Source: Botryllus schlosseri
Lineage: Eukaryota
Direction: 5' to 3'
Length of the DNA stretch: 64,000 bases
Assembly: GCA_051294905.1 (NCBI GenBank)
Contig: CM119372.1
Span: 32,302,001-32,366,000 of the forward strand
The notes under the pieces were generated by a model, which was given only the letters and a program-made list of their open reading frames with translations, had not been told where the DNA came from and did no database searches. Below, piece after piece: positions 8,329-36,200 of the stretch (its first letter is position 1; each line of letters opens with the position of its first letter). Position numbers and translations under genes: made by a program.

Positions 8329-8555
8329 GGATCACATGCACTATACGCCGTCATTTCCCGTACACAGGGAACACGAGTAAAACAATGAATCCCCATGTGC
8401 ATTAATGATTCCCCATGTACATCCTTTTCTCCAAATGCCTTTTTTCTTTTTCATTCTCTCGAATTTCCAATGAAAAAGTGCTGACTCAGCGTATTTCTAG
8501 TTACGAGGTTTGAGTTTTTTCCGTCTGCTCCCATTGTAGAGCATTTCGCACCTCT

Positions 8556-11500
8556 TCATAATGTACAATTTTCTTGCCTTATAATCTCGGCAGGAATGGG
8601 TCCTTTGCATAGTATCACCTCAGGGTTTTGTGATTGTAGCAGAATGAGCCCTCTGCTTCTGGCTTCTGCAGCATTCACGTGAAAAGCAACATTTTTCATT
8701 TTTGATTTCCGCGCCTTTGTCTTACTCAGATGAATAAATTTCCTATTAATTCGTTCAATGCCCAATAATACGATGTGTCTCGCATTTGATTTAGTCGTCA
8801 TGTGGTACAATACGTCGTTACCTCTGTACTCCTTATACGGGGGAGGTGTTCCTCTGGTGTGTCCGTGTGCTGCGGCCAGTCCCGCGTCCGAAACTATAGC
8901 CCTGTCACACTTTCTCATGATGGTTTTAATTTCTTCGATATCCATCCGCATCCCTAGTTTTCTTTCGATTATTCGACATGTCTCTTCCCAAGGGTGGTAT
9001 CCATCGATTGAGTCATTGCAGTGCTCGTGTCGACAGTGAAACATCAATGCTCGTTGTATTTTTCCTTCTCGGGGCATTGTCTGCGGATACAGAGGTTTCT
9101 CATGTTCCGGAATCATGGTCCAAACGTGTGGATCGTCTTCCCCCGCGGCCATCTCCATCCAGTAGGATCGAGATAATCCATCTGACGTGAACACCTGCAA
9201 CGTACTTAGATGAATTACCTCCTTTATCTGAAATCCTGAGAGGTGATTTAGCCATCTCTGAATCAAAGGTTTCGGACTCGGATTTTTTGCCTTATCTGTC
9301 GTCCTTTTGAGAAGCCCAAATACTCCCGTGTTATCGGTGATTATCGTGAAGGGTAAAGCTCTCAACATTGACTGCCATTTTTCCACCGAATCCTTTAGGG
9401 CTTTCAATTCTTTTGTGCATTGATCATAGGCTTTTGCCGCTGAAGTTGCCCATTTCTGACTGTAATAAGCGATTGGGTACACCTTTCCAAAAGGCGGTTT
9501 GCCCCCCACCTCCGTTTGAAAGATTATAGAACCAAATCCTATTTCGGAGGCATCCGTTTCCACAAAAATGGGAAGATCAGGATCCAAGTGGTACAATACC
9601 TTAGTATCATCGAGGGATGCTTGTGCCGTTTTGTAATCTTCCAGCAATTCAGCGGTCCACAGTACCGGCGTCACTCGCCCTTGAGTTGCCGGGACCTTTC
9701 CTGTCAAAGCATCGAATTTTGCTAGCTTCAAGCTCAATTCTGGGATATGTTCAGAGATGTAGCGGAGAGCGCCAATCCACCCCCGTAACTCATATATATT
9801 GTGGGGTGGGGAAAGTTCTCGTAAAGCCCTTATTCGTTCGGGCTGAACTTCAATTTCTTTTCCCGTTAAGGTTGCTCCCAACAGGTTTACCTTCTTCTTT
9901 CCAATGAAACATTTGTTAATGCTCACCGTCAATTTCATTTTGGCAAGTTGTTCAAATAACAGACGCAAGAGCAGCAAATGGTCGTCTACTGTTTTTGTGC
10001 TAAGAAAAATGTCGTCTATGTAGGCCTCCATAGGCGTCGCATTCTCCTCATCCGACCGGCCATTTTGCTTCATGTGTTGTTGGTATCTTTCCGTGATGGG
10101 TTTCACTACGCATTCCTGCATATTCGCGCTCCAAAAAGCTACAGCTGTTTTGAGCCCCATTGGCATTTTACGCCATCTTACGTGCATCCCTTTGATGGCT
10201 ATACCCACATATTGCTTAGACCTTTCCGTGACATCCATGTGGAAATAGGCCTTCTTCAGATCCAAGAGAGAAAGTACTTCTCTTCCTTGGGCGAGCTGTT
10301 TTACATCTGGCACTAACGGCGGAGGTACTTCTATTGATTTTATAGCCGCATTTAGGGGTTGTAGATTCTGTACGACCCTCCATGCTTGTTTCCATCCGTC
10401 CTCCTGCTTCTGCCTCTCATTCATTTTCTGAGGAACAACAAAAATAGCTAACTTCCATTCGGCAAAACCTTGTTCGATGACGCCTAAATCCAGGAAGTTC
10501 TCTACCGCCTCCTTTAATGCCTTTGCCTGGCCCTCCCCCTTTAGATTATAAGGACCAGAAACAAAAGGCTTAGTTGAAGGATCCTTAAGCTCGATGTCGC
10601 ATGGATACTTCATAGTCTGTGGGGCGCCAAGGTGGCCCCGTAGGTCTTCGAGTTCCGACGCAAAAGGCGCGTAGACGGCTTTCCAGACATCATCTGGAAT
10701 GATTGTGTTTTCCGGAGTTGTCAAGTCAGGAGGTTTGTACGGGAGTTTAGCCAGTGCTACTGATTGTGCACAGAGGTTCTCGAGTTCCGTTTTTACGCTC
10801 GCATTGGTGTCCTTTTGTAGAATGTATGTGGTAACTGGGCCAGCCATAGGCTGATACGACTTTCGTGATGTTCGGGGTTTTGGTGTTGGTGGAGAGAGGG
10901 CGAGGTCCTTCGTTGTCAGCGGGGATTCCCTACCTTTCCAATCTGACCTCTGAGCTCGGTGCGTGCCCGCACTTACCGTCACGCCGACGGACTCAATCTC
11001 CGCCGGGGGCCCTATTTCTGGGGAGACGTGCATCCTAAAATCCCCAGACTCCTCGTCGGTCATATCCAGACCCGTGTCCGGTTGACCGACGATAGCTGCT
11101 TCGTTAATACCTTTTGGGAATGTAGTTAAGACATGAGCTGCCGTAATGCTACTATGGGCCGAACAGTTACATTTGTCCGGACAAGTGCATCTACGAGAGC
11201 TTTCAGGACCAACTCTCTCGCGTGGGTCCTCATTTGCGCCAGCGGGGATTCCACACTCGACGTCTTCAAGAATAGTGCCAGCAGGGATTCCTGACTCGAC
11301 ACTTGGAGTTTCCCATAGGTCTTGTGTGACGTTAGTTGCGCTTTTCAACTCGTCGTTCGCGCCAGTGGTGATTACCATCTCGACACTTGCGCCAGCGGCG
11401 ACGGCTGGCAACGATGGCCAGCGCGCCGATTCGACGCTTACCTGATTTGCAGCTTCCATCAACCCATCGTTGGTCGCAGTTTTGCAAAGACTGCTTCCGA

Positions 11501-12041
11501 CTTTGGTTCCATTCCGTTGATCACACGAGATATCGTGGTATAATGTTAACAAAGACAACTCTTCATTTGCGTTAGACGGAGTTTTGAACTCAGTCGCTAT
11601 GTTTGGTAATTGCTGTACCTGATCAATCCATTTCAATCCCACAATATTGAGCGGGACCCCTTTCCCGGTCGCAAATGGAACCGACAGACCGTCAAAATCG
11701 ATTACTACCAAGGAATCAACGTGGGATGAGCCACCTATACCACGTAATTTCATGTCTAAGGGTTGGCGCTCATCCCAACTTCGTGGGTATTTAGTCTTCG
11801 CGACATTTTTCATTATCAAATTGGGGATGCTTCCCGCATCAGCCAGGAATTTTGTACCAGTAGTTGTATCAATTAAATACAAGAGTTGGCCGCCGAACAG
11901 TTCCGTGAAATCCGGCTGCAAAGGGTCATCCGGTGTATCAAGGAACGTAAATAGGGGTAGGGAATCATTATGTACAATTTTTGCGTGTTGGGGTAGTAAA
12001 TTATCTGGGAGCTGATTCACCGGATCAATCAGCACCCCCAT
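8556..12041 (-). CDS. pol: Pol polyprotein, Ty3/gypsy-like: PR, spacer, RT, RNase H, IN Zn-finger remnant, Tpt1/KptA-like domain
   Basis: PR FLADAGS...IVGL; RT LDLKKAYFHM, MPMGL, YIDD, KVNLLG; RNase H ETDAS, PIAYYS, KEL, TDN, DGLSR; no DDE core; C-terminal YHMT...RKFIHLS...SQNPEVIL. Confidence 0.95.
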   Translation of the reverse strand: MGVLIDPVNQLPDNLLPQHAKIVHNDSLPLFTFLDTPDDPLQPDFTELFGGQLLYLIDTTTGTKFLADAGSIPNLIMKNVAKTKYPRSWDERQPLDMKLRGIGGSSHVDSLVVIDFDGLSVPFATGKGVPLNIVGLKWIDQVQQLPNIATEFKTPSNANEELSLLTLYHDISCDQRNGTKVGSSLCKTATNDGLMEAANQVSVESARWPSLPAVAAGASVEMVITTGANDELKSATNVTQDLWETPSVESGIPAGTILEDVECGIPAGANEDPRERVGPESSRRCTCPDKCNCSAHSSITAAHVLTTFPKGINEAAIVGQPDTGLDMTDEESGDFRMHVSPEIGPPAEIESVGVTVSAGTHRAQRSDWKGRESPLTTKDLALSPPTPKPRTSRKSYQPMAGPVTTYILQKDTNASVKTELENLCAQSVALAKLPYKPPDLTTPENTIIPDDVWKAVYAPFASELEDLRGHLGAPQTMKYPCDIELKDPSTKPFVSGPYNLKGEGQAKALKEAVENFLDLGVIEQGFAEWKLAIFVVPQKMNERQKQEDGWKQAWRVVQNLQPLNAAIKSIEVPPPLVPDVKQLAQGREVLSLLDLKKAYFHMDVTERSKQYVGIAIKGMHVRWRKMPMGLKTAVAFWSANMQECVVKPITERYQQHMKQNGRSDEENATPMEAYIDDIFLSTKTVDDHLLLLRLLFEQLAKMKLTVSINKCFIGKKKVNLLGATLTGKEIEVQPERIRALRELSPPHNIYELRGWIGALRYISEHIPELSLKLAKFDALTGKVPATQGRVTPVLWTAELLEDYKTAQASLDDTKVLYHLDPDLPIFVETDASEIGFGSIIFQTEVGGKPPFGKVYPIAYYSQKWATSAAKAYDQCTKELKALKDSVEKWQSMLRALPFTIITDNTGVFGLLKRTTDKAKNPSPKPLIQRWLNHLSGFQIKEVIHLSTLQVFTSDGLSRSYWMEMAAGEDDPHVWTMIPEHEKPLYPQTMPREGKIQRALMFHCRHEHCNDSIDGYHPWEETCRIIERKLGMRMDIEEIKTIMRKCDRAIVSDAGLAAAHGHTRGTPPPYKEYRGNDVLYHMTTKSNARHIVLLGIERINRKFIHLSKTKARKSKMKNVAFHVNAAEARSRGLILLQSQNPEVILCKGPIPAEIIRQENCTL

Positions 12042-12050
12042 GCGTTTTTT
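12007..12050 (-). promoter_or_regulatory. -1 programmed ribosomal frameshift signal (gag-pol)
   Basis: A AAA AAC at 12050-12044 is in gag phase (TCA AAA AAC); pol is in the -1 frame; downstream hairpin GGG-T-GCTGATT...AATCAGC-T-CCC. Confidence 0.85.
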
Positions 12051-14872
12051 GAGAGTCGAATGCCTTGATTCAGTTCATCATCCGTCCAATATGAAGCGTC
12101 ATATCGACGTGGACGATTATGATATTGTGGTTCCGTCCAGGCCACCTGGCTATTACCCTGGGTTTGGTGTGCAGGCGGTCCTTGAGGACCCCATTGATCC
12201 CTATCATGCCAGTGGGTTCTATCTCGATTTTTTGGCCTGTTATCATAATAGGCTTCACACAAAGCGGTCCTTTGTGTAAATGAGGGAGATCCTTGCGTGG
12301 CAAGATACTGGTCAAGACCCTCAATCGTTAGCATGTTATTTCTTGTCAGGAAAGATTTCCAATTACGTTCCGCCGATTCTTTGACGCTTGGGGGCACTGG
12401 ACGTGCTCGCGTACGAACTATCCACCCCTGGTGTTCATCATAGGCGAGAACCTGATTGTTTAGCCAAAGTATAAATTTAGCCACACAACTACGGGACTGA
12501 TGTCCCGGGGCCTTACAGTAATAACACACCGAGAGTGACTGGCCTTGAGAGGGATTCAAATACAAGCCTAGAGGTGCGAAAATATTAGGGTTTCCAAGAA
12601 AATTGTACCTCTCACCTTGGCTCTCCGCAATGTTGCGGGCCTCCCGGCTGCTAGACGGAGTAATTTGCGAGCTGTCTACGCCCATTCCTGAGTCCTGTGT
12701 GTTCGCCATTCGAGGACTACGGTTTGAAGTGCTTGACCTTTGACTAGAACGTCGTGGTCCCGTGGTTTCGGGCGGCGCATTACGAACATTTGGAGGTCGC
12801 TCTTGTCTTGACCTCGGGGCCTGTACTCTTCTGCCGCGTCCATTTCCATTCATGACGTGCGTGGGTGGACGGTTGATCCGAGCGTTACGGAGTGGATTAC
12901 GGCGTGGTAGAGGGGTTTGGCCCGTGCCGGTCAGTCGTCGTGGTGACATTTGTCTTGGCGGTCCAGGGGGTGTCCCGCCCAAGACATTCGGTGGCGGCTG
13001 GGGTGGGGGTGATTGCGCCATTGGCGGCGGTGTCACACCTGGTGGTGGTGGAGGAGGAGTATCAAGTCGTCCATCCTCGCCACCGTGGGTCGGATAGCTG
13101 TGTACTATTGGTCCTGCAGGCTGAACATTATATATATGTACCGGCGGTAGGGAAGGCTTCGTTTCACGTGTTTGACCAGTTCCCCGATTCTTGGAACGCG
13201 TCTCCTGTTCGTCCAGAAATTCGGAGTTCCAAACAAGCTGTAGTTCCTCCGCAACTTCCCGCCAAGTCTTTTTTTCTTCCCAGCCTCGTAGCATTAGTCT
13301 GAGTGCCTCTGGTAATCGTTGTCGTAGATTTCGGAAAAGTCGCAGTCCATCCTGGTTATCCTTAATGTCACTTTCCATGTTTATTTCTAATTGTTTCAAG
13401 GCGCTATTTAGCAGCGGTAGGGGTTCGTCCTCCCAGCGGTAATTTCTACGGAAATCCCCGATGATCTTTTCATCATTTACCAAGCCCTGAGGGTTGGATA
13501 AAGAAAGGGATCTCATTACCGAAGCCCACTCTGCTTCCCCCGAATTTGTGTTGAAGAAATTCCCCAGTTGGGTTGCCTGCTTGTGGCGGCCAGCATCCCT
13601 TAACTTCTTCTGCATGGCGTTTGCCAAAATAACATCAGCATCCGTGTTTCCTGGGCCGTGACGTATTCGTCTCATCGAATTTGCCATCCATTTCAGAAGT
13701 GGCATGTCTCCAGGATCCATCATAAGCTGAAGCATCTCTTTTTCCGATTGGGGTTTAACGGGTATGGTGATCATCGGGGTTGTGACACCAGGTTGTTGTC
13801 GTGACCGTTGTGTCCCAGACCTTACACCATTATCTTTTGGAGTAGAAGTAAAACGAGGCATATTAGGGTACCCGGGGCTGTGAGATTGGCCCTCATCAGA
13901 ATATTCGTCAGTAAAATCATCATGGCTGTAGCTGTCTTGGAGTGACTTTTGGTAATTTCTTATCTCTTTAGCCAGACGTCGCATTCGAAAATCGATGTCG
14001 CCACTCTCTGAATTGTTCTCCTCGTTTCGCTGGTCCTCCTGTTCCAGAAATGTCACACGTCTAGATTCGCCATCCGCACTTCCTGCCCTCCTTCGAGAGT
14101 CTACCACTGCCCTACGACGGTTCTGGCGGTTTTGCCATGCCCGATAGCCTTTATACTTGTCCAGAGGGCCCTCTTCAGGATCTGACTCGGCCCGGGATTC
14201 GTCTCCCTCAACCCTGACAGTGTTCGGTATTTCGCCGGGACTCCCTTTTTTCTGCTTGGCACGCGCACCGCTGTCCACATGAAAACACGGTGTCGTTCCC
14301 TTACGGGAGCCTAACAACGCGGTCGGCCCTGAACTAGGTATCGTAGGGTATACAGCCTTTACCGTATGGCAATCTAAACCTTTCGTGACCGTCATTGTAG
14401 GCATTTGCGTTACGTCGTGTAATGACTGTTCAGTAAGAGGATCGTACGCTGGAGGATCGTAAGCTGGTGCGTTTGGTAGTACAGTCAAAACAGGAGTTGG
14501 AGTTCTTTCCTTTACAGCTTGCGCATGTGATTTTCCGAGGTCGAACTCTGACGCAAGAATTTCATTTAGTACTTCGGTAGAGACTTTCCCGCTAACTTTT
14601 GTGGTGGCATCGCACACAGCTTTGAGGTCCGCTTGAGCTTTTCGTACTTCTTTCTTTGCCTTTTCCAGCCCTTTCATAGTGTCGGGCAGGGTCGTCTTAA
14701 CTTCTTTTAATAAATCTGCTTGTTCAGCAACATCTTTAGCAAGTTGCCTTTCTTGTCGTCGAACATCATCATGACGTTTTTGCGTCGCTTTTAGCAGCCT
14801 GATTCCTTGTTCGAGCTCGCTGGCCGCTTCTGACGACTTTTTCCTTTTAAACCTTCTTAACATTCTTCGCAT
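12029..14872 (-). CDS. gag: Gag-like polyprotein, 947 aa
   Basis: N-terminal coiled coil, PPAY motif, proline-rich region, CCHC knuckle CYYCKAPGHQSRSC; directly upstream of pol. Confidence 0.9.
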   Translation of the reverse strand: MRRMLRRFKRKKSSEAASELEQGIRLLKATQKRHDDVRRQERQLAKDVAEQADLLKEVKTTLPDTMKGLEKAKKEVRKAQADLKAVCDATTKVSGKVSTEVLNEILASEFDLGKSHAQAVKERTPTPVLTVLPNAPAYDPPAYDPLTEQSLHDVTQMPTMTVTKGLDCHTVKAVYPTIPSSGPTALLGSRKGTTPCFHVDSGARAKQKKGSPGEIPNTVRVEGDESRAESDPEEGPLDKYKGYRAWQNRQNRRRAVVDSRRRAGSADGESRRVTFLEQEDQRNEENNSESGDIDFRMRRLAKEIRNYQKSLQDSYSHDDFTDEYSDEGQSHSPGYPNMPRFTSTPKDNGVRSGTQRSRQQPGVTTPMITIPVKPQSEKEMLQLMMDPGDMPLLKWMANSMRRIRHGPGNTDADVILANAMQKKLRDAGRHKQATQLGNFFNTNSGEAEWASVMRSLSLSNPQGLVNDEKIIGDFRRNYRWEDEPLPLLNSALKQLEINMESDIKDNQDGLRLFRNLRQRLPEALRLMLRGWEEKKTWREVAEELQLVWNSEFLDEQETRSKNRGTGQTRETKPSLPPVHIYNVQPAGPIVHSYPTHGGEDGRLDTPPPPPPGVTPPPMAQSPPPQPPPNVLGGTPPGPPRQMSPRRLTGTGQTPLPRRNPLRNARINRPPTHVMNGNGRGRRVQAPRSRQERPPNVRNAPPETTGPRRSSQRSSTSNRSPRMANTQDSGMGVDSSQITPSSSREARNIAESQGERYNFLGNPNIFAPLGLYLNPSQGQSLSVCYYCKAPGHQSRSCVAKFILWLNNQVLAYDEHQGWIVRTRARPVPPSVKESAERNWKSFLTRNNMLTIEGLDQYLATQGSPSFTQRTALCEAYYDNRPKNRDRTHWHDRDQWGPQGPPAHQTQGNSQVAWTEPQYHNRPRRYDASYWTDDELNQGIRLSKNAWGC

Positions 14873-14880: not shown

Positions 14881-15228
14881 CTATTGGCTGGAGGAAGTAC
14901 TATTGACAGCTAGTTGTATATCAGAAGAAGATTCGTCAAAAAATGACGTTGATCTGGGTGACGTAGCAGTAGACGTAGAATTGGCGTGAATAAGCGTAAT
15001 TTCACTACTGTTCTCCGTTGGTCCTGGCGACGCGCTGGTAGGTGTAATATTTGTAGTGTTTAGCGTGGATTCACTACTATTTGGCCCAACAATTGCGTTC
15101 AACAGATCAACAAACGCTCCTGGCGACACGTGTAAATAAACTGCTGCCAACGTAATCAGGAGAGATACAAATGATGAAATCAAGGATATGACAAGTACCA
15201 ATTTTGCGATAGTCGTCTTAGAGAGCAT
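14881..15228 (-). CDS. ORF0: small type II membrane glycoprotein, 115 aa from the first ATG
   Basis: MLSKTTIAK, then a hydrophobic helix, then an S/T-rich tail with six N-x-S/T sequons; lies between PBS and gag. Confidence 0.65.
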   Translation of the reverse strand: MLSKTTIAKLVLVISLISSFVSLLITLAAVYLHVSPGAFVDLLNAIVGPNSSESTLNTTNITPTSASPGPTENSSEITLIHANSTSTATSPRSTSFFDESSSDIQLAVNSTSSSQ

Positions 15229-15257
15229 CGATTGGTCAACGTCTGGACACCGGAAGT

Positions 15258-15275
15258 ATCCCAGTGGTGCCTCCA
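15258..15275 (-). promoter_or_regulatory. Primer binding site, tRNA-Thr type
   Basis: TGGAGGCACCACTGGGAT matches 17/18 the complement of vertebrate-type tRNA-Thr(AGT) 3' end as recalled (TGGAGGCACCGCTGGGAT); preceded by CA plus a 2-nt spacer. Confidence 0.85.
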
Positions 15276-15277
15276 AT

Positions 15278-16430
15278 TGTGTTTAAAGTGCGGCTCCGAT
15301 AACGATCGTTATTGCGAGTAGTCCACACTTGGTTCGGTATACTTCGTGGTACAAAGTTGACTCTTTCTTTTACTCTTGACGTACTCAGATGTTGATTGAA
15401 GCAATAGTAGTTGTAATGTTGTTTCTTGTCAAGTTGACAATGACCTTGAGGTCCAGAATTCTAAACTAACCTTGATAACTGGTAAGCTTATACCTTAATA
15501 CAACCAAATACTCCAATCGTTATCATGCAGACAGAATGAGGTATCTAAGCAAAACTCGGTTAATATTGGCATATAGAATATCCATCAATTATAACACAAG
15601 ATAAAGCTTAAACCTATTCATATTCATGCACGAATTAATGTATTTTAAATACTCCAAGGTTTGTTTTCGCATATAAACTATGCGACGGCCTTTCCTGCCG
15701 AAGTGGTATCTTTCAGGGTTTGTTAACACATAACTAATGTGACGGCCTTTCCAGCCGAAAAATAGCTCATAGGTTTGTTTACACATATAATGCATGTGAC
15801 GGCCTGTTCTGCCGTAAAGCAGCTCCAAGGTTAGTTTACACACATAATGCATGTGACGGCCTGTCCTGCCGTAAAGTTCATTTATGACATATCGCTACAT
15901 TGTACACCATTCAATCACAATAGTCATGCACGAACTAATGTTTTCTGTTATATCTCTGGGTTCCTTTAGTATCGGTGTGTATAAGCTTTTTATTCATTCG
16001 TATGTACCGTGTCTCACAAACAATAGATTTGATTTACCACGAATCTTTAACTCTACACATGCTCCAATAAGGTAGAGGTTCCTAGCTTAGTCTAAGGGTG
16101 CGTAGCTAGTTATAACGCGTAACTCCGGGAGGTTCCAACATTAAGGACTTCTTATCGTTGACCCGATTAACATGGCCATATGCCAATTAAAGTGCACTTG
16201 TTGATACTACCCTTAACAAGGTGTTGCTTATTCGAACACTGTTAGATACCCAGGGTCCCTTTTACGGGTTTCTGAAGAATACCCTAAACATTTCTAATCC
16301 TAGGCTTCTATCCCGCTAGGGTGAAGGGTCCCGACACTAATATAGGGCGTGGTCGGTGTATAACGCCTAATTAAAGCCTACAGGCGTAGTACTCGCTATA
16401 ATGTTACTGTAGTAACAACCAATTATTCAC
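15278..16430 (-). repeat. LTR-like region; U5 end CA at 15278, far boundary undefined, no second copy in window
   Basis: aaacaCA-AT-TGG junction; candidate AGTAAA poly(A) signal near 15370-15375; enhancer-like tandem repeats. Confidence 0.55.
15652..15876. repeat. Four tandem ~56-bp repeats, U3 enhancer-like
   Basis: Core g(c/t)gacggcct.t.c.gccg.a recurs four times. Confidence 0.85.
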
Positions 16431-16476
16431 ACAATAAATGTTCACTAACCCATACACATATCTACGACATAAAATG

Positions 16477-17150
16477 TTAGCGCCATTTTAAAGCAACCTG
16501 ATGGTATTGATCAAAGATACAGTAAAGGCAGTGCTTGAACAAAATGGCGTCACTATGCAATATTACATCAAAGTAACCCTCACATGAAAATACCAATGTC
16601 CTGTTATGACTCGTGCGTCTCGTCATCATGCCGCAGATTGATTCATGTCGTTGTTCGTCAAACGCATCTTCTCCGATCTCCATCATGGTATGTCCAGGAC
16701 ATATTTGGCAACCGTACATTTGGGTACTTTCGTCTCGTGCATCTATTTCGAACCCGATTTCTTCAACTCCCTTGATAATGAAACGATTCTTCTGCGTATC
16801 TTTCCTTGATTTTGCAGTCGTCTTCGTCGTCTCCTTTCTTCGTTATCTTTAACGTGAGCTTTGGCGGGCATTGTTCGGCACATTTCAACCTCTGGTTCAC
16901 TGGTCCCTGCTGAGCAGTGATTTTTAGCGCCGGATTTCTTCTTATCTCTTCTATTTCACTTCATTAAGCCCTAGATTCTATCGAGGGGAGCAGTCATTCG
17001 GGACTGTCGAATAGAAATTTTAGAGTTGGTACCACCAAGTCGTTTTTTTAATGCCAATAGAATGTCCAGTCCATCTCGATATTCTCATGCCATTTCATCA
17101 CTCCACCCAGTCTTATTATGGTCTTATTGAGAGCAAGTCATTAAGTTCTC
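16477..17150 (-). pseudogene. Decayed orphan ORF
   Basis: Protein-like segments (MKWHENIEMDWTFYWH*, EIEEIRRNPALK..., IKGVEEIGFEIDARDESTQMYGCQICPGH...KWR*) broken by stops and one frameshift. Confidence 0.45.
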
Positions 17151-17589
17151 GGCATGTTTTCCAGACGCTCTTCTTGTCATACAAGTTTTAGATACACTCG
17201 ATGCGCACAGAGAGGACATTAAAACACACACATATCAGAATTTCGCGTCATTTGCTATCGTAACGTTGTCACAATACAATAATTCGCATGCACGTACTGA
17301 TCATGGTGCCATAAGTGCACTCGTAAGACACATCCATTTCGTGAAACGAATGTGCAAACAAGGCGGGTCTTATTCTAATGTCATACTCAATCATCGACAC
17401 ATCAGTTTCGAAAAACGAATGTGTGGACAAGTTCAACCATGGGTTACTTTTCTAAGGTCTTTATTTTAGCAGTACTGGCTTGAGGTATTCCTAATGTTAT
17501 AGGCCTATTATTTCCGGTTATAATGTTCATTTTTATTCAACTTATGTAGTTCCATAGCCATTCACGACGTAGCTACGTTGTAAATCGCT

Positions 17590-18455: not shown

Positions 18456-18489
18456 TCTTTTTGTTGCCATCTTGTTCGACGCAACGCTT

Positions 18490-20100: not shown

Positions 20101-20390
20101 AAATACAAGAATACAGCTTCTACTTCAGAGCTATTCTCCAGTTACACTGCATTCTGACTCAAATTCTTTTTCCGTTAAGTTTAGCTAGACAGGGATGCCG
20201 AATTATTACGTTTGTCCTAATTCCCTATCAGCTATAGCCTTATTAATTTAGTTGTCCCGGCTTGTCTGGCAGTCTAAACACTACCAGTCCGTTTCCATAT
20301 TTCAAAAGATGGATAATCAACAGCAATAAAAGGGTGAACAAAAACAACAACAAATTATGACACTACTGTCATAACACATTTTAAAAGTGT

Positions 20391-21479: not shown

Positions 21480-21547
21480 TCGACGTAGTACTATGCTATC
21501 AATTAATCTTATATATGCAAAAAAAACAAAAAATGGGAAGATAGGTA

Positions 21548-27150: not shown

Positions 27151-28098
27151 TTACAATGGTCTGTAATGAGGTTCACTCGCAATTATTTCCAAAAATCTTG
27201 GAAATCTTTCTTCTAGTGCCACTCGTCTTTTCCAGAGCCACTCATGCAAGTATTGGGGAATAAGTGATCGAGGTACACCGCACAATCGTCTGATAGCAGA
27301 CTTAAAAAAATTCCAAGAAGCCTCAATCAGCTGCGTATGCACACCGTCTTCACTAACATAGGTCTTATGGTGGTTCACTACCGAGTGTTTATAATTCATA
27401 CCCAAACTTTCTAATTTGCGATAGCTGGCAAAAGAATCGGTCCATATTGTAGATCCCTCTTTTACATGCTTCATAATTATCTCTGACAATACCGAAGCTT
27501 TTCTTCCTTCTTCAGGTACCAATTCTGCAAACATTTCACGAGTTTCCACATCTATTCCGGCCAAAACCCATCGCTGTCGTATCGGTCTTCCGCGGGGATT
27601 TCCCGGTTTTCGCTTAGCCACAAAGGTCTCATCGATCTGGCATACGTGGGATTTCCCGTGAGATTCACCGCCTATTCTGGTACCTCTTCTCTTCATTTCA
27701 CTTGAGCATACTTTTCGAAGTTTTCTGGACCAATTTACCAAAGTTCTTTTGCTGACATTCGCTTCGAACGCAATCTGTCGCTGTGATACATCTATTGTCC
27801 AAAGATAAACAATTATCACAAGGTTAGCGAGCTCTATTCTACTTCCCTCAAACAACGATCGTTTCCTTATAGACACTGTAGTATTGCACCTGGAAGTAGA
27901 ACACCTCCATCTATATCCATCCCTCAACCATCTACATTTTTCTTCGATCATTGGTTGTTTGCATTTGGAACATGTAGCTTCACGAGCAAGTAAATGGCGT
28001 GAACGCAGAAATTCTATACATTTTCGGCCACTTGAGATGATACCCAACCGAACAAGATGAAGCAGATTGTCCCTTCTCCGGATTTTCTTACATTTCAT
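27151..28098 (-). CDS. IS1595/ISXO2-like (Merlin-type) DDE transposase
   Basis: N-terminal CxxC...C...C Zn ribbon; QIDET, RGR...WV, IWTDS..SY..L, VNH, HTQLIEASW, YLHEWLW; all three acidic residues intact. Confidence 0.9.
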   Translation of the reverse strand: MKCKKIRRRDNLLHLVRLGIISSGRKCIEFLRSRHLLAREATCSKCKQPMIEEKCRWLRDGYRWRCSTSRCNTTVSIRKRSLFEGSRIELANLVIIVYLWTIDVSQRQIAFEANVSKRTLVNWSRKLRKVCSSEMKRRGTRIGGESHGKSHVCQIDETFVAKRKPGNPRGRPIRQRWVLAGIDVETREMFAELVPEEGRKASVLSEIIMKHVKEGSTIWTDSFASYRKLESLGMNYKHSVVNHHKTYVSEDGVHTQLIEASWNFFKSAIRRLCGVPRSLIPQYLHEWLWKRRVALEERFPRFLEIIASEPHYRPL

Positions 28099-28172
28099 TT
28101 TCAATTTATAAAGTATACACTCCAGTATAACGTAGATTCTGTATATACAAAAAAATGAAACAATGAGCGTTT

Positions 28173-28679
28173 TTAGGCAGGCACTTTCAAAGCCATAAAT
28201 CGGCAATCGGCTTCTTTTAACGATATTGCACGTGTTTGTGCATACGCGTAAATCTGAACTTCCGGAAAGATCACCCATACTATGAGATCCCGTTCAGTTT
28301 CCTCATTTCTAAGAAAATCCTTCCAGTCTGGGTTTACCCTTTTCAAGTCTGTAACCCATTGTATCCCGATATCTGCGAACGCCATTTGAATAGGTCTTTC
28401 AGGATAGAGGCTTCCTGCGTAAATCTCCTCCCACTCGTTTTCATCAAGATGTTTCCCAGTCCAATAGTTGTCGCATGTTGGAATACCATACTTCTGTTTC
28501 CAAAATCGTAGTCGCAGATTGGATTCATCCTTCATTACATTATACAAATGATTTGTCAAGGTGTATGTTGTCATGAGGAATTTCAGCGATTGTAGCCCAT
28601 AATCGATAAGTGCTTCCTTTTGGGGTATCCAAATTGGATGTTCTGTCTCCGGATCTTCACAACGCAAACCCAAACACAT
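28173..28679 (-). CDS. Orphan protein, 168 aa; weak similarity to 32255-33079
   Basis: ATG-initiated, packed in the cluster; LKFLMTTYTLTNHLYNV...RLRFW resembles LVMETIKTTPVRDHLMNL...RIQYW. Confidence 0.6.
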   Translation of the reverse strand: MCLGLRCEDPETEHPIWIPQKEALIDYGLQSLKFLMTTYTLTNHLYNVMKDESNLRLRFWKQKYGIPTCDNYWTGKHLDENEWEEIYAGSLYPERPIQMAFADIGIQWVTDLKRVNPDWKDFLRNEETERDLIVWVIFPEVQIYAYAQTRAISLKEADCRFMALKVPA

Positions 28680-30012: not shown

Positions 30013-30561
30013 CTAATCAATATCAACACTACTTCCCTCATATGGAAAAGGATGTATTTCTATGCGTCTTATCCTTTCTGTTTGCCAATGAATTGAATTC
30101 GAATATCCTTTTAGTCCCAAATCGTTTTGACAAGACCATACTTCAACATGTGGTGGATCTTTACAACTATCTCTTTCATCATACACATTTTTGGAAATTC
30201 TAGTATTCGTAGTTTTTATCACGAGTCCCCTAATTAATTCATACAACATGACTCTTCTTCCAAAAGAGATGCGTTCATTCATTCTGATTGCAAATATGTC
30301 ATTAATCACATGACAGAAAGCATTTAATGTTTCTTGCGCTATTTCGTCATCTAGGGATACATCCACCGGTCCAAAGTTCGTCTGCTTAACCCATTCGATC
30401 TGGTCTGTAAGTAATTCCCATACCTTTTCTTTTACCATCAATATTCTAGATTCGTCATTGTAGTATTTTAGATCCCATTTATCCAATTCCTCATATACGC
30501 CATCCAAAAGGTACCAGTTTGGTAGATTATTATCAACCTCAATATAATCGAACTCTAACAT
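30013..30561 (-). CDS. Orphan family B protein, copy 3
   Basis: VKEKVWELL and LYELIRGLVIKTTNTRISK...WSCQNDLGLKG match copy 1. Confidence 0.75.
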   Translation of the reverse strand: MLEFDYIEVDNNLPNWYLLDGVYEELDKWDLKYYNDESRILMVKEKVWELLTDQIEWVKQTNFGPVDVSLDDEIAQETLNAFCHVINDIFAIRMNERISFGRRVMLYELIRGLVIKTTNTRISKNVYDERDSCKDPPHVEVWSCQNDLGLKGYSNSIHWQTERIRRIEIHPFPYEGSSVDID

Positions 30562-32140: not shown

Positions 32141-32254
32141 ACCAGAGTACCAAGTGCGAATGACCCCATGTAGTTCTACACAATTGTCCACACATTATGC
32201 TCATCAGAAACCGTACTTCGTTAGACATTCTGAATCGTGATATGCCTCTAACCG

Positions 32255-33079
32255 TTACAAGTTTGAACCTTCACACATTTTCATTTTTTTTGGCTTGGGC
32301 AAAGTTTGGCTCCCATGTCCTCTACCCGGGGAGAGCCCAACGTATTGTATATTTTCAATCGACGAGGTGCACTCGTCACCTCTTTGTTGGGTACCTTCGT
32401 CTTTCTCTTTTCGAGGTTGGTGAGTTCGCTCTGACAACTGTTCAATAGGAAGAATGAAAGCACCTCCCACGAAGCCATAAATTGTCGTAGTTCCATATGT
32501 AAAGCTCCACCCTTCAGGGTTTCCGCCGTATAGTAGTTCAAATTCTGCCTGTTGTCGCAACATTAAAACATCCCAAAGGGGCAACTCTTTATCATTTCGA
32601 TAATATTGAAGCAATATGGCAATGGCGGTTACTAGCGCTTCTGCGTATAACACGTATAGAACTAAAAGTCCCTTTTCTTCCTCAGTATTTTGATTCAATG
32701 CCTTATTAATTTTACACGCGTCTTGTACGCAAGTGTGACACAGTTTTACAAGTTCCATTACATCCCAAGTGTTTTGAAAGTATGCACGAACGTTCCTCAT
32801 AACCCAACACTGTCTGCATTGATCAATTGTGGCCGGGCGGAATGGCACTTCCAATCTTGTCCAGTCCCCTTTTGTAAGTACGCACTTTTGCCAATATTGG
32901 ATTCTCGGGTTAGCATTTCCATGAGCTCCCATCAATAAGTTCATCAAATGATCTCTAACCGGAGTAGTCTTGATAGTTTCCATTACTAGGCGTTGTCTAT
33001 GCGTTAGCGGAATACTCGATGCCCACTTGAGTGCAAAACTATGATCAACTTCAGGCTGGCACAGAAGTCCGTGACACAT
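32255..33079 (-). CDS. Orphan protein, 274 aa
   Basis: Long ATG-initiated intronless ORF with a CxxC pair and a hydrophobic segment; last ORF of the island. Confidence 0.65.
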   Translation of the reverse strand: MCHGLLCQPEVDHSFALKWASSIPLTHRQRLVMETIKTTPVRDHLMNLLMGAHGNANPRIQYWQKCVLTKGDWTRLEVPFRPATIDQCRQCWVMRNVRAYFQNTWDVMELVKLCHTCVQDACKINKALNQNTEEEKGLLVLYVLYAEALVTAIAILLQYYRNDKELPLWDVLMLRQQAEFELLYGGNPEGWSFTYGTTTIYGFVGGAFILPIEQLSERTHQPRKEKDEGTQQRGDECTSSIENIQYVGLSPGRGHGSQTLPKPKKMKMCEGSNL

Positions 33080-33224
33080 GTTGTCTAAACTAACTCTTCA
33101 CCTATATCCCTTTTTTTGAAGAAAAATAGAATTACTGGGCGTTGTCTATGCGTTAGCGGAAAGCTTGATGCCCACTTGAGTGTAAAACTATGATCAATTT
33201 CGGGCTGGCACAGAAATCCGTGAC
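32982..33224. repeat. 94-bp duplication of the 5' coding end of ORF 32255-33079
   Basis: 32982-33075 is repeated at 33131-33224; the copy lacks the ATG. Confidence 0.9.
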
Positions 33225-36200
33225 TTTTTTACCATACGGTCATTTCCCAGTTTGCGTACGGAGAACGCATGTACGTCGCCGACTTCACGAGTACTATACA
33301 TAGCATGACAGGCAATTGTTGAAGCAGGCTATTAGGCCGCGTTGATACGTTGTTGCATAATATACAATGTACGTAAGTGGCTCATATACCAAAAATCATC
33401 ACCATGGTACATATGGTTTTTTATTTTAGAATCACTCCATTGCAAAATAGCTTAGCCATTAGCCGTTAATGAATACAAAATACACAGCGTTTAGGTAAAT
33501 GCAACCTTAATCCATGTAATCATGACCACAACCCGCGTTCACTACAGCCGTGCTCAGTCAGCATCGTCTAGTAGGCCCACCAAAATCCAGAAAGTTAGGT
33601 TACAATTTTTACTGAATACTATCCGACGAATAACGATAAACAGATCAGTGATGCTTTAAAAAGAAAAGAAAAAAAGGAAAAAACCACCATTTCAAAATGC
33701 AACATACAGTCGCGCAAGCATTGCTGCTTGACTCAATGCGCGAACATGCCAAATATATGCCCACAGGACATCGTTGTTATTGATTCTCTGCTTCTAGTAA
33801 TATCTGGCGTAACTGATTCAGTTAATTGGACAAAATCCCATTAACAGTTGTCACCATTGTGGTCAAAACACTATTCAGGTTTGTTGGCTCGGCGCACAAT
33901 GTCTTCTGAAGAATCAAACCATAGATAGGCTAACTAACATACGGAGGCTAGTTATCTATAATTTAACAGTTTGATATTCTGTCATTGCCTGAGACGTTCA
34001 AAGCGTTTCTGACGCAAGGGACGGACACTTTTATTGTCACACCCGATTAGAGTGGTAACTAAGTAAAAAGGTATGGAACACCTCTGACTGCGAGATACAC
34101 TCGATTGATTATTACTGATTCAGTCTCGTCCATCTCCATATCCTACTTCAACCACCTTCGTTTTATGGCGTAACAGTGGACTAACACGGTGTAGACCGCT
34201 ATTATATTATAGAATGTAAACGTTTACACTCTACAATAGTACTTCTCAACCTGTGTGACGGTTCGCAATTGTGCGAATTAAAACAATTTCAGTGCGAATG
34301 ACGAAGGTGGTGCGAACAGTGCGAATGAATTTACGGATCAAGTGCGAACGAAAATCGTGAACAATTGTTAATTTTTCTGATGGTGAATAATTCAAACAAA
34401 CCCAACAGGAAACCCAAGGTCAGTCGAACCTCTGTAGTAGTGACGCAATTTCGAGTTTCTTTGTTCCTCTCGTATAGCCTACTCGCGAGACAGAAGTTGG
34501 AGCAGCGTATCATAAGGTAGCGAGCTCTAATGTGCCTATATATTTTTTTTTTTTTATCGTTTTTCTATTATGTTCCAAGAGATAAGGAAAAAGCCTCAAT
34601 ACAATCATGTGGGGTTTTTCATCCGCCCAACAAACTGGAGCCTAAGGGCGATTTCTGCGAGCAAGCATTCTTCATTCGCGAAAATACGCTGCATTTCGGG
34701 CTGGAGTCCAGAACAGATTTTAAGACATGGCCATCCAAGAAAGTGGACGTTTTTGTACAAAACTCAACAACTCATTTTACAGAAATAGGTGAAATCAAAC
34801 CGAGCGAAAAAGTTGCCATTTTAATGTGACACTGCAATGCAACCTTGTTTTATACGGCCCGCGAAAGCCTCAATAAACGTGAAAATATTGATAAAATGCG
34901 CAAAATACCAAATTACTGTGGGTACTTGGTTAAACTTCTTCTTACTGTATTTCAACATGGTAACGATAAGTTATATTCTGCCATAGTATTTTTTTTTTTT
35001 TATTTATTTATTTTATTGATAGTGTGATGTCCCGAGCTCACGGCCCATGTATTTATGAAAGCTATCAATTGCTAAACAACACAGAACGTGAATCGTAAAT
35101 GACTTAATTTGGACTACAAGTGTGATCTAAGATTGGTGACAGGAGCAAGTGCAATACTTTTTGTGCTATACTTGGACAAACCGATTCGCAAGTGTGTCAG
35201 GTAGACTCGTTTATTTATGTGTAGAGGTATTTATATATTGTAGAACAGTATCTAATGGTAGCGCAATGATGTCGTCAGCCTTGTGTCCTGGAGTCAGACC
35301 AAAAGTACAATCAGCAATTCTACGAACAGATTGGTGCTCACAGACTCAAATTCACAACCAATTCTAAGAATCGGGGCAGGGACATCTAGAGTTCTAGATA
35401 TCCCTGAATATGGACAACAGGATTTCATCCATTATTTTGACAATGAGGACGAGCAACACATAAATTCTTGTCAATGTTTCTGAAGCGTGTACGCTATCAT
35501 CAAATGAATGTTTGGTTTGTCTTAAATAACCAAATACATACAAATTATTCCCATGTTATCGGTCACTATATTACTAAACAACAATATTTAATTTTGGCTT
35601 AGTATCTCGATTTTATATAGTGCGGCTCACGAATGGATTCAAATGTTGAATGAAGCCCGCGAGATAAACAGTTTGCCCACTCTCGAGGTAAGCAGACAAT
35701 TTTTTTGCACATCAGAACAAAATGTTGTTAAGTGTTATCATCTTCTATTTTATAACAATATTCGATTAGCACGTGCGAATGAAATTTGTCTTACACCAAA
35801 GATGCGAATGGAGCTCAAAAAGGCTGAAAAGCACTGCTCTACAATTATATCGTAGCAACGCCGCAGTACTTTCATGCAGTGTTGCACTGCATATTGGAAC
35901 TGATTATGAAACGGCGCGCTGTATTCTTGTGATACTAATTATTATGTCGTGGGACGGACGATGCTGCTTGGCGGGCCGGATCCGGCCCGCGGGCCGTAGG
36001 TTGCCAACCCTTGAACTACGCAATCGCGTAATATCGCAGAAGGCAACGCTTTTCCAATCCGACACAACATAGTGTCTATTGTACATATCTTCATGCTACT
36101 GAAGTGGTATCAACCCCAGTTGCTGGTGATGTGTAACTTGCAACTGCATAAGGGATTCGTAAGTATACACATTTTGCCTTATTTGACACCGCCCAGTGCC

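What the first reader, a model, noticed from the sequence alone, without database searches (positions are those of the whole stretch)
8330..33300. ~25-kb integrase-less giant retroid element carrying a DNA-virus-like cargo cluster
Seen: intact gag-pol with PBS and frameshift signal; no DDE integrase; about a dozen intronless, tightly packed, same-strand cargo ORFs (E2, IAP, LRR, transposase, orphan families); no MITEs, while both flanks have many. Known: Ty3/gypsy elements and retroviruses normally encode integrase and little cargo; caulimoviruses and hepadnaviruses lack integrase; >30-kb gypsy-like Burro elements are reported from planarians. Inference: retro core and cargo form one reverse-transcribing virus-like genome.
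Basis: partly seen in the sequence, partly recalled or inferred. Interest (0 to 1): 0.92.

Follow-up and report, generated by a model that had tools for sequence, protein, structure and literature searches.

The report
Integrase-less retroelement beside transposase gene array
An intact retrovirus-like gag-pol that has an RNA-repair (KptA/Tpt1-like) domain where integrase should be lies next to a tight array of 13 intron-less genes (IAP, E2, LRR, a DDE transposase, orphan families); the two are tied together by genes they share with relatives elsewhere, but it is not shown that they are one 25-kb reverse-transcribing genome.

Summary
All genes lie on the minus strand. gag (12029-14872) and pol (8556-12041) are intact and joined by a canonical -1 slippery site. 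No rve integrase and no LTR exist anywhere in the 64 kb. Thirteen packed, intron-less ORFs (20391-33079) encode an E2, a 3xBIR+RING IAP, an LRR protein, an IS1595/Merlin-type DDE transposase and three orphan families. The claimed PBS could not be verified.

New here: pol ends in a KptA/Tpt1-like RNA 2'-phosphotransferase domain that appears to keep its catalytic tetrad. This integrase-less, LTR-less architecture is shared by about four distinct relatives in other assemblies. There the extra ORFs, including a glycoprotein, lie 3' of pol and are unrelated to this cargo.

The DDE's closest relatives also sit in tight same-strand arrays. One array has an E2. Another has a homologue of that glycoprotein, which also occurs at 60573-63884. 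So core and array belong to one gene-sharing network.

Against a single co-linear genome: no terminal repeats, cargo 5' of gag, a 5-kb ORF-free spacer, and GC3 of about 0.35 against 0.46.

Best reading (0.45): two juxtaposed modules. One genome: 0.3.

The parts
8556..12041 (-). pol ORF, 1161 aa, intact, in the -1 frame relative to gag. Order: protease motif, RT (9867-10391, with Y-I-D-D), RNase H (9231-9659), KptA/Tpt1-like domain (8601-9068). No integrase.
   Evidence: Pfam: RVT_1 2.5e-16, RT_RNaseH_2 4e-17, PTS_2-RNA 1e-7 (32.6 bits, cut-off 26). A profile of four pols against PDB gives 8r0s 'Enzymatic polyprotein' 118 bits, Ty3 95 bits, and Tpt1 structures at E about 1e-10 to 1e-11. The protease motif reads D-A-G-S here and D-T-G-S in P0002 and P0003.
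12044..12050 (-). -1 ribosomal frameshift heptamer A AAA AAC in the gag/pol overlap.
   Evidence: Read directly from the sequence. U UUA AAC lies at the equivalent place in L001 and L002. A downstream stimulatory structure is not demonstrated.
12029..14872 (-). gag-like ORF, 947 aa, intact. It has a CCHC knuckle (12485-12529), an N-terminal coiled-coil-like part and a Pro-rich part.
   Evidence: zf-CCHC E 0.0017. Homologous to the ORFs upstream of pol in L003 (42%), L001 (24% over 580 aa) and L002. No PDB relative.
14881..15276 (-). Small ORF (115 aa from the first ATG) with one transmembrane segment and a Ser/Thr- and N-glycosylation-rich tail. It ends 6 nt before the gag ATG. Whether it belongs to the core is unknown.
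   Evidence: No Pfam hit. No counterpart in L001 or L002.
15277..20390 (.). ORF-free spacer. It holds a 57-bp tandem array (15652-15877), a BIR-like remnant on the minus strand (16477-16755), a 77-bp tandem array (17594-18439), and a 330-nt stretch (18512-18837) that is 66% like 30886-31229.
20391..20843 (-). Orphan family A, member 1 (150 aa).
   Evidence: Paralogy to 22518-22970 (34%, E 5e-31) and to 22117-22521.
21024..21554 (-). Ubiquitin-conjugating enzyme E2 (151 aa from the ATG at 21479). The HPN...C active-site motif is present.
   Evidence: UQ_con 1.2e-47. Sequence.
21548..22000 (-). Orphan ORF (150 aa), loosely family A.
22117..22521 (-). Orphan family A member (131 aa from the ATG).
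22518..22970 (-). Orphan family A member, probably a pseudogene. Homology to its paralogue runs through 1 in-frame stop, and there is no ATG at the expected start.
22989..23849 (-). Orphan family B member (271-286 aa).
   Evidence: No homologues found among 5.8 billion proteins by the word-indexed search, or in IMG/VR.
23951..25639 (-). IAP: 3 BIR domains plus a C-terminal RING, 562 aa, in a single exon.
   Evidence: BIR 4e-54 in 3 stretches, zf-C3HC4_3 3e-8. The best relatives are ascidian IAPs (Styela clava 45%), and the Styela gene has introns.
26090..26908 (-). Orphan family B member.
27151..28278 (-). IS1595/Merlin-type DDE transposase with an N-terminal zinc ribbon. The likely start is the ATG at 28098 (315 aa). 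D-D-E and the zinc-binding Cys residues are conserved.
   Evidence: Pfam 1e-16, NCBIfam 5e-28. Alignment A8. Closest relative P0101: 76% aa, dN/dS 0.10, dS 1.4.
28173..28679 (-). Orphan family C member (168 aa). Its 3' end is also found upstream of the DDE in Logan contig L010.
28796..29827 (-). Leucine-rich-repeat protein (343 aa) with a signal-peptide-like N-terminus.
   Evidence: LRR_8 8e-36.
30013..30561 (-). Orphan family B member (182 aa).
32255..33222 (-). Orphan family C member (274 aa, 32255-33079), plus a 94-nt duplicate of its 5' end (33131-33224).
60573..63884 (-). Outside the finding's interval. A type-I membrane glycoprotein ORF (1103 aa) with a signal peptide, a mucin-like Ser/Thr region and a C-terminal transmembrane segment. 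It is homologous to the ORF 3' of gag-pol in L001 and L002 and to the ORF after the DDE in L013. Its GC3 (0.435) is like that of gag-pol.
   Evidence: An HMM built from the relatives alone hits only this ORF (E 1.5e-10 among 179 window ORFs).
8069..8328 (.). MITE-like palindromic element (114-nt arms, 92% complementary) about 230 nt beyond the pol stop. It is a neighbour, not part of the element.

Best explanation
The interval holds two modules that belong to one gene-sharing family of virus-like elements of ascidians or other marine invertebrates. They are most likely juxtaposed pieces and not one co-linear reverse-transcribed genome.

MODULE 1, about 8.4-15.3 kb. This is an intact retrovirus-like core without LTRs or integrase. 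gag is translated directly. A -1 frameshift at A AAA AAC yields gag-pol. pol carries protease, RT, RNase H and, where integrase would be, a KptA/Tpt1-like NAD-dependent RNA 2'-phosphotransferase domain. I infer that this domain repairs or processes 2'-phosphate or cleaved RNA ends of the element's RNA or of tRNAs, as proposed for the KptA domains embedded in the polyproteins of an ascidian nidovirus and a picorna-like virus. I do not infer that it integrates DNA. Relatives carry a tRNA-type PBS-like block just upstream of gag, and a glycoprotein 3' of pol.

MODULE 2, about 16.5-33.2 kb. This is a single-strand array of intron-less genes centred on a conserved, selected IS1595/Merlin-type DDE transposase. 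Around it lie host-derived manipulation genes (an IAP E3 ligase, an E2, a secreted LRR protein) and three fast-evolving orphan families. I infer that the IAP and E2 block apoptosis or redirect ubiquitination, and that the DDE enzyme provides DNA insertion.

SHOWN: the gene content, the intact ORFs, the frameshift site, the absence of IN and LTR, the conservation of the KptA-like domain, the purifying selection on the DDE, and the gene-sharing links.

INFERRED: every function, and the claim that the two modules arrived or evolved separately.
For: The clade lacks integrase and LTRs. This follows from pol relatives P0001-P0003 and loci L004 and L005, from the absence of any repeat within +-10 kb in L001 and L002, and from the lack of rve matches.

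The KptA-like domain is well supported: Pfam above its cut-off, and a profile against eight Tpt1 structures at E down to 1.5e-11, with the Arg68 and Arg121 equivalents aligned and an invariant R-H pair upstream. A precedent in ascidian virus polyproteins is reported in PMC9503650.

L001 and L002 share homology only from about 125 nt upstream of gag to about 5.8 kb past pol. Their extra ORFs are unrelated to the window's cargo, and nothing lies on the same strand upstream of gag.

Composition differs. GC3 is gag 0.44, pol 0.475 and glycoprotein 0.435, against cargo 0.28-0.41. Outside contigs are internally uniform.

No terminal repeats exist for any partition of the block. The spacer holds a BIR remnant and tandem arrays.

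The array is a recurrent entity on its own. The C2-DDE adjacency is conserved at dS 1.4 with dN/dS 0.10. All six closest DDE relatives whose contigs could be read are followed by a tight or overlapping same-strand ORF. None of those short contigs shows RT.

The two modules are linked: a DDE followed by a glycoprotein homologue in L013, and a DDE followed by an E2 in contig jBZ06M7J.
Against: It would be an odd coincidence for two rare element types to lie 5 kb apart on the same strand, with a third related ORF (the glycoprotein) in the same window, if they were unrelated insertions.

The whole 25 kb, spacer included, lacks the interspersed repeats of the flanks. That fits one young insertion.

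All arrays seen are strictly single-stranded, as expected for a genome copied from one RNA.

In relatives GC3 also drifts down from gag-pol to the 3' ORFs, by 0.03-0.05, so composition is not decisive.

The outside DDE contigs are too short (1.1-5.7 kb) to exclude a nearby gag-pol. One of them has an unread 546-aa ORF just upstream of the DDE.
Confidence: 0.45

Rival explanations
1. Cargo and gag-pol are one large reverse-transcribing, virus-like genome. It may be a circular, pararetrovirus-like genome that was linearised between pol and the first cargo gene, so that the cargo, which would lie 3' of pol on the circle as in the relatives, appears 5' of gag here. The separately encoded DDE transposase would stand in for the missing integrase.
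For: The modules are adjacent, co-oriented and free of host repeats. Lack of integrase and LTRs is a clade trait. Relatives carry multi-ORF 3' regions followed by about 76-bp tandem arrays, and the window has a 77-bp array between cargo and gag, which fits a permuted circle. The gene-sharing network links DDE, glycoprotein, gag-pol and E2. All arrays are single-stranded. The best PDB match of the RT profile is the pararetroviral 'Enzymatic polyprotein' 8r0s, at 118 bits against 95 for Ty3.
Against: GC3 differs by about 0.10 between the core and the cargo, while other contigs are uniform. L001 and L002 start at the same point just upstream of the PBS-like block, which speaks for defined ends and against random linearisation. 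They carry no DDE, E2 or IAP within +-10 kb. Poly(A) hexamers are not avoided on the coding strand: 20 observed against 27.5+-4.6 expected. The tandem arrays share no sequence. No copy with this order is known.
Confidence: 0.3
2. The array is a host gene cluster: domesticated or lineage-specific single-exon genes, perhaps an SL-trans-spliced operon as is common in tunicates. The retroelement simply landed beside it.
For: The cargo's GC (0.35-0.43) matches the flanks (0.40). The IAP is closest to ascidian IAPs. The DDE is under strong purifying selection, and its adjacency to C2 is conserved at dS 1.4, as orthologous host loci would be. Ciona has a 38% DDE homologue annotated as a gene. Few poly(A) signals lie between the ORFs.
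Against: One sequencing run (SRR25569784) holds at least three deeply diverged DDE arrays (76%, 40% and 36% identity) with different neighbours and, in a sister run of the same series (SRR25569780), very different GC3 (0.30 against 0.62). That looks like diverse mobile or viral lineages. One array places the DDE beside a viral-type glycoprotein shared with the retroelements. Orphan family B has no detectable homologues; families A and C were tested only against solved structures, and C against IMG/VR.
Confidence: 0.15
3. The juxtaposition is an assembly artefact, a chimeric join inside the repeat-rich spacer.
For: The tandem arrays at 15652-15877 and 17594-18439 are the kind of sequence where assemblies misjoin.
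Against: No N run and no abrupt break is visible in the stretches read at the block's edges and in the spacer. The minus-strand BIR remnant between the arrays and gag continues the array's content towards the core.
Confidence: 0.04

Closest known systems
Env-carrying Ty3/gypsy elements (Metaviridae/errantivirus-like; Tor of Oikopleura and the 'ancient errantiviruses' reported in tunicates, PMC13524379)
   Same: The gag-pol layout, the PR-RT-RNase H order, an RT/RNase H of the Ty3 type (20-26% identity to Ty3/gypsy Pols; Ty3 structures at 95 bits), and a CCHC knuckle. In relatives there is also a tRNA-type PBS-like block and a glycoprotein ORF 3' of pol.
   Different: There is no integrase and no LTR. 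A KptA/Tpt1-like domain lies at the pol C-terminus. The glycoprotein has no detectable sequence relative among solved structures; likeness to F- or gB-type fusogens was not tested by fold.
Caulimoviridae (plant pararetroviruses) and their endogenous copies
   Same: PR-RT-RNase H without integrase, and no LTR in the DNA form. The best solved-structure match of the RT profile is 8r0s 'Enzymatic polyprotein' (118 bits).
   Different: The host is an animal. There is a gag-pol -1 frameshift, a glycoprotein and a KptA-like domain, and no movement protein. An episomal circle is not shown.
KptA/Tpt1 domains embedded in polyproteins of RNA viruses (Botrylloides leachii nidovirus, Beihai picorna-like virus; PMC9503650)
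   Same: A KptA domain embedded in a replicase polyprotein, with an ascidian host in one case.
   Different: Those are positive-strand RNA viruses. No retroelement case is mentioned in that survey, and none turned up in my literature searches.
Merlin / IS1595-family DNA transposons
   Same: A transposase with a zinc ribbon and a DDE core, with its catalytic residues kept.
   Different: No TIRs flank the gene or the array. The gene is packed among unrelated same-strand genes here and in all six related contigs that could be read.
Giant cargo-bearing elements: Teratorn (piggyBac plus herpesvirus, medaka), Terminons/Athena (rotifers), Burro (planarians). Named from my own knowledge and from the finding, not from a tool.
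   Same: A large size, co-oriented accessory ORFs, and (in Teratorn) a virus-like gene set paired with a cut-and-paste DDE transposase.
   Different: Teratorn is a dsDNA herpes-like virus with TIRs. Terminons use a Penelope-like RT. Burro, as far as I recall, is an LTR element. None of them has the PR-RT-RH-KptA pol.

Membership tests
Ty3/gypsy LTR retrotransposon (Metaviridae) | Long terminal repeats flanking the element | tested here: not met
   No direct repeat links any pair of candidate ends in the window, and none occurs within +-10 kb of pol in L001 or L002.
Ty3/gypsy LTR retrotransposon (Metaviridae) | An rve-type integrase in pol | tested here: not met
   No rve hit in Pfam. Pols that carry integrase match only the RT-RH part.
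Ty3/gypsy LTR retrotransposon (Metaviridae) | RT followed by a Ty3-type RNase H, and a gag upstream | tested here: met
   RVT_1 and RT_RNaseH/_2. Ty3 structures at E 3.5e-26. gag with a CCHC knuckle and a -1 frameshift.
Ty3/gypsy LTR retrotransposon (Metaviridae) | A tRNA primer-binding site next to the 5' LTR | tested here: inconclusive
   A PBS-like 20-nt block is invariant in L001 and L002, 69 nt upstream of gag in L001. It is absent from the window. No tRNA was available for a complementarity test.
Pararetrovirus (Caulimoviridae-like) | PR-RT-RNase H without integrase, and integrated copies without LTRs | tested here: met
Pararetrovirus (Caulimoviridae-like) | An episomal circular dsDNA genome, with permuted or rearranged endogenous copies | not testable with these tools
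   This needs reads or other copies from this genome. L001 and L002 share the same 5' start, which does not suggest random linearisation.
Tpt1/KptA RNA 2'-phosphotransferase | Sequence membership in PF01885 | tested here: met
   32.6 bits against a cut-off of 26. A profile of four pols matches eight distinct Tpt1 structures at E 1.5e-11 to 2e-7.
Tpt1/KptA RNA 2'-phosphotransferase | The catalytic Arg-His-Arg-Arg tetrad (PMC6333775) | tested here: inconclusive
   The equivalents of Arg68 and Arg121 are aligned and invariant. An invariant R-H pair lies 43 aa upstream, inside the Pfam envelope, but was not aligned residue by residue. The single-sequence AF2 model was too poor (pLDDT 45) for a fold test.
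Merlin/IS1595 DNA transposon | A DDE transposase of the IS1595 type | tested here: met
   Pfam 1.2e-16, NCBIfam 4.6e-28 above its cut-off. D, D, E and the zinc-binding Cys residues are conserved.
Merlin/IS1595 DNA transposon | Terminal inverted repeats with a target-site duplication | tested here: not met
   No inverted repeat lies around the gene or the array above chance level.
Endogenous large dsDNA virus | Hallmark genes (capsid, DNA polymerase, packaging ATPase) and genes on both strands | tested here: not met
   None appears among the ORFs scanned with Pfam. All genes lie on one strand. IMG/VR scans with families B and C, pol and the glycoprotein found nothing.
IAP (BIR + RING E3 ligase) | BIR repeats plus a C-terminal RING | tested here: met
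   Three BIR domains and a C3HC4 RING.

The most novel reading that the evidence does not exclude
Ascidians may harbour a family of large, single-strand-coded retrovirus-like elements of 25 kb or more. These would have given up retroviral integrase and LTRs, encode a KptA-type RNA-repair domain in pol, use a separately encoded IS1595/Merlin-type DDE transposase for insertion, and carry a host-manipulation cargo (IAP, E2, LRR, orphan families) together with a novel glycoprotein. The window would then show one such genome, possibly as a permuted copy of a circular form.
Probability: 0.27. Interest if true: 0.92.

Novelty: new variant of a known kind. Interest (0 to 1): 0.72.

Why it matters
A retrovirus-like gag-pol that lacks both integrase and LTRs, in an animal, and that recurs in several assemblies, raises the question of how such elements enter DNA.

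A KptA/Tpt1 domain fused to RT-RNase H was not mentioned in the literature I could search. It parallels the KptA domains in the polyproteins of an ascidian nidovirus and a picorna-like virus. This points to a host RNA-cleaving defence or RNA-end chemistry that different viruses of these animals must counter.

The DDE-centred arrays are a second, undescribed kind of gene-dense unit. If the two prove to be one genome, it would be a retroelement that outsourced integration to a cut-and-paste transposase and reached the cargo size of a DNA virus.

Tried and rejected
- LTR and TIR searches at several sensitivities found nothing above chance.
- Rfam and tRNA scans of the window and loci found nothing, so the PBS could not be tested.
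- Exact look-up of ten window proteins found none in the collection, so other copies in this genome cannot be reached.
- Orphan families have no homologues: not by protein search (B), not in IMG/VR (B and C; the family A alignment was too weak to search with), and not in PDB profiles.
- AF2 models of family B (pLDDT 37) and of the KptA-like domain (pLDDT 45) were too poor, so no fold search was run.
- gag and the glycoprotein have no relatives in PDB.
- Poly(A)-hexamer avoidance on the coding strand is not significant.
- Non-coding spacers and tandem arrays of the window and of L001 and L002 share no sequence.
- The second large minus-strand ORF (60573-63884) is not a second pol. It is a glycoprotein.
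- No RT-DDE fusion occurs among the long DDE hits.
- The context of the Ciona DDE homologue is not on record.
- The IAP hit P0040 lies on a bacterial contig and is irrelevant.
- The run accessions do not appear in the paper library.
- An RT phylogeny was not built, because no reference sequences could be fetched without typing them.

Full report
ANATOMY. Everything of interest lies on the minus strand.
- Reading 5' to 3' on that strand, the finding's interval starts with a 13-gene array (33079 down to 20391).
- A 5.1-kb ORF-free spacer follows (20390-15277).
- Next comes a small membrane-type ORF (15276-14881) that ends 6 nt before gag.
- Then come gag (14872-12029) and pol (12041-8556).
- A MITE-like palindrome (8069-8328) follows about 230 nt after the pol stop.
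- GC is 0.45-0.50 over gag-pol, 0.36-0.40 over the array and about 0.40 in the flanks.

THE RETRO CORE.
- gag (947 aa) and pol (1161 aa) are uninterrupted: 0 stops and 0 frameshifts beyond the programmed one.
- pol is in the -1 frame, and the heptamer A AAA AAC lies in the 46-nt overlap.
- The relatives L001 and L002 have U UUA AAC just before their gag stop.
- A hairpin follows in the window, but its energy is not distinguishable from shuffled sequence.
- Pfam finds RVT_1, RT_RNaseH and RT_RNaseH_2 and, at residues 992-1147, PF01885 (RNA 2'-phosphotransferase Tpt1/KptA) above its curated cut-off. It finds no rve.
- Fourteen Ty3/gypsy Pols that carry integrase match only the RT-RNase H region of the window, L001 and L002.
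- The protease motif reads D-A-G-S in the window and D-T-G-S in two relatives.

RELATIVES OF POL.
- The word-indexed search of 5.8 billion proteins gave only three close relatives (47%, 38% and 36% identity). All lack integrase. The next hits are ordinary Ty3/gypsy Pols at 20-26%.
- Two more relatives came from marine metagenomes. L003 and L004 are 98% identical copies from two assemblies.
- In the four-sequence alignment the C-terminal domain is conserved, with 20 invariant positions.
- A profile of it matches eight distinct solved Tpt1 structures at E 1.5e-11 to 2e-7. The invariant arginines pair with Arg68 and Arg121 of the C. thermocellum enzyme (tetrad as defined in PMC6333775).
- An invariant R-H pair lies where Arg18-His19 are expected. 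All four tetrad residues therefore appear to be kept, two shown by alignment and two inferred by position.
- An earlier notebook entry that said one arginine was lost is corrected in entry 4.
- The same profile scores the pararetroviral 'Enzymatic polyprotein' 8r0s at 118 bits, above Ty3 at 95 bits.
- A survey of NAD/ADP-ribose systems in viruses reports KptA domains inside the polyproteins of a Botrylloides leachii (ascidian) nidovirus and of a picorna-like virus. It does not mention retroelements (PMC9503650). My literature searches found no RT-KptA fusion.

ARCHITECTURE OF THE RELATIVES.
- L001 and L002 come from the same ENA assembly, and their pols are about 70% identical.
- They share homology only from about 125 nt upstream of the gag ATG to about 5.8 kb past the pol stop. 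That is a unit of about 11.5 kb: gag, pol, a CUB-domain ORF, a large glycoprotein region and two smaller ORFs.
- A 20-nt block with the layout of a tRNA 3'-end complement is invariant between them, 69 nt upstream of gag in L001.
- Neither locus has any long-range direct or inverted repeat within +-10 kb.
- Upstream of gag there are only opposite-strand fragments of other elements.
- None of their extra ORFs resembles the window's cargo, and no remnant of them lies downstream of the window's pol.
The L002 gag is split into four ORF pieces, so at least three breaks. The CUB/glycoprotein region is divided differently between L001 and L002, so at least one frame break exists in one of them. The L003 gag-pol junction uses one frame change more than expected.

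THE ARRAY.
- The ORFs encode an E2 with its active-site motif, an IAP with three BIR domains and a RING, an LRR protein with a signal-like N-terminus, an IS1595/Merlin-type DDE transposase, and three orphan families.
- One family-A member is probably a pseudogene (1 in-frame stop).
- A BIR-like remnant lies in the spacer, and a duplicated 5' piece of the first gene lies upstream of it.
- No family member occurs outside 16.5-33.2 kb.
- The IAP is closest to ascidian IAPs (Styela clava 45%). The Styela gene has introns and this copy has none. From this I infer that the host, or the donor of the gene, is an ascidian.
- About half of the ORFs have a TATA-like box within 70 nt of the ATG, and few are followed by a poly(A) hexamer.
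- Hexamer counts on the coding strand are not significantly low.

THE DDE GENE IS THE KEY.
- Against 1.84 billion cluster representatives, its best hit (P0101, 76% aa) starts exactly at the window's internal Met61.
- The Logan contig L010 that carries it is 76% identical in DNA. Its first 30 nt match the 3' end of the window's preceding gene, so that adjacency is conserved.
- dN/dS is 0.10 at dS 1.4.
- The zinc-ribbon cysteines and the D, D and E residues are conserved across 14 relatives.
- Every other close relative whose contig could be read is also followed by a tight or overlapping same-strand ORF.
- On contig jBZ06M7J the DDE is followed after 6 nt by an E2, with more ORFs on both sides.
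- On L013 the ORF that follows the DDE is homologous to the glycoprotein region of L001 (E 8e-19) and L002 (E 1e-11).
- It is also homologous to the 1103-aa ORF at 60573-63884 of the window.
- An HMM built from the relatives alone finds only that window ORF (E 1.5e-10 among 179 ORFs; alignment A7).
- That ORF has a signal peptide, a mucin-like region and a C-terminal membrane anchor. Its composition is like that of gag-pol.
- It is separated from the array by 27 kb that carry repeats shared with the other flank.

WEIGHING THE INTERPRETATION.

For one genome:
- adjacency and shared strand;
- the repeat-free 25 kb;
- the clade-wide lack of integrase, while an intact DDE enzyme sits in the neighbouring array;
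- the single-strand coding of all arrays;
- the gene-sharing network.

Against one genome:
- no terminal repeats of any kind;
- cargo on the 5' side, whereas relatives have unrelated extra ORFs on the 3' side and start just upstream of their PBS-like block;
- no DDE, E2 or IAP near L001 or L002;
- GC3 that is uniform inside each outside contig (0.62/0.59, 0.46/0.44/0.44 and 0.36-0.40) but splits here into 0.44-0.475 for gag, pol and glycoprotein against 0.28-0.41 for the cargo;
- a 5-kb non-coding spacer holding a decayed BIR.

The glycoprotein ORF lies 27 kb away behind host repeats. This shows that pieces of this element family can lie as separate blocks in this neighbourhood.

I therefore rate 'two juxtaposed modules of one gene-sharing family' at 0.45. 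I rate 'one genome, possibly permuted' at 0.30, 'a host cluster beside a retroelement' at 0.15, and 'artefact' at 0.04.

MECHANISM (INFERRED).
- The core expresses gag and, through the frameshift, gag-pol.
- Reverse transcription is probably tRNA-primed, as the relatives' PBS-like block suggests.
- With its tetrad apparently kept, the KptA-like domain most plausibly removes 2'-phosphates or otherwise processes cleaved RNA ends of genomic RNA or tRNA. That would be a counter-defence or RNA-maturation role. It is not a substitute integrase.
- How DNA enters the chromosome is open. The candidates are host repair, as for endogenous pararetroviruses, or a DDE enzyme of the associated arrays.
- The array's IAP, E2 and LRR proteins fit manipulation of the host's apoptosis, ubiquitin and recognition pathways.

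NOVELTY AND SCORE.
- The parts are of known kinds: a Ty3/caulimovirus-grade RT, a Tpt1 domain, a Merlin-type DDE, an IAP and an E2.
- The combinations are not described in what I could search: PR-RT-RH-KptA without integrase or LTRs, and DDE-centred single-strand arrays that share a glycoprotein with such retroelements.
- I file the finding as a new variant of a known kind, with interest 0.72.

2. My scripts printed ORF-piece names that include coordinates for a relative's (L002) split gag. Those coordinates are neither used nor repeated here.

Noticed in passing
window 60573-63884 (-): A 1103-aa type-I glycoprotein ORF with gag-pol-like composition. It is homologous to the ORFs 3' of gag-pol in L001 and L002 and to the ORF after a DDE in L013. 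Any gag-pol that belongs to it would lie beyond the window end.
   Followed up: yes
window 8601-9068 (-), pol residues 992-1147: A KptA/Tpt1-like RNA 2'-phosphotransferase domain occupies the place of integrase. It is conserved in all four aligned pols and appears to keep the Arg-His-Arg-Arg tetrad.
   Followed up: yes
window 8069-8328: A MITE-like palindrome with 114-nt arms (92% complementary) and a 32-nt loop, just beyond the pol 3' region.
   Followed up: partly
window 2025-3407: An element of about 1.4 kb bounded by perfect 34-nt inverted repeats with sub-repeats. It is probably a non-autonomous DNA transposon of the host.
   Followed up: no
window 17594-18439 and 15652-15877: A 77-bp tandem array (about 11 copies) and a 57-bp array (4 copies) lie in the spacer between the array and gag. 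L001 has an unrelated 76-bp array after its last ORF.
   Followed up: partly
window 18512-18837 and 30886-31229: Two stretches of about 340 nt, 66% identical, in direct orientation and 12.4 kb apart, both in ORF-free gaps of the array. Their meaning is unknown.
   Followed up: no
window 36000-61000: There is a persistent weak negative GC skew on the plus strand across the 'host' DNA between the array and the glycoprotein ORF, which the 1-8 kb flank does not show. This might reflect minus-strand transcription or decayed coding sequence.
   Followed up: no
one search hit list; L014: Endozoicomonas, a bacterial symbiont genus named here for ascidians (E. ascidiicola), encodes BIR+RING proteins 28-35% identical to the window IAP. 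This looks like host-to-symbiont gene transfer.
   Followed up: partly
L003 and L004: The same relative of the element (98% DNA identity) appears in two separate marine metagenome assemblies.
   Followed up: partly
window pol, protease motif near residue 68: The protease active-site triplet reads D-A-G in the window, where two relatives have D-T-G. Protease activity may be altered.
   Followed up: no
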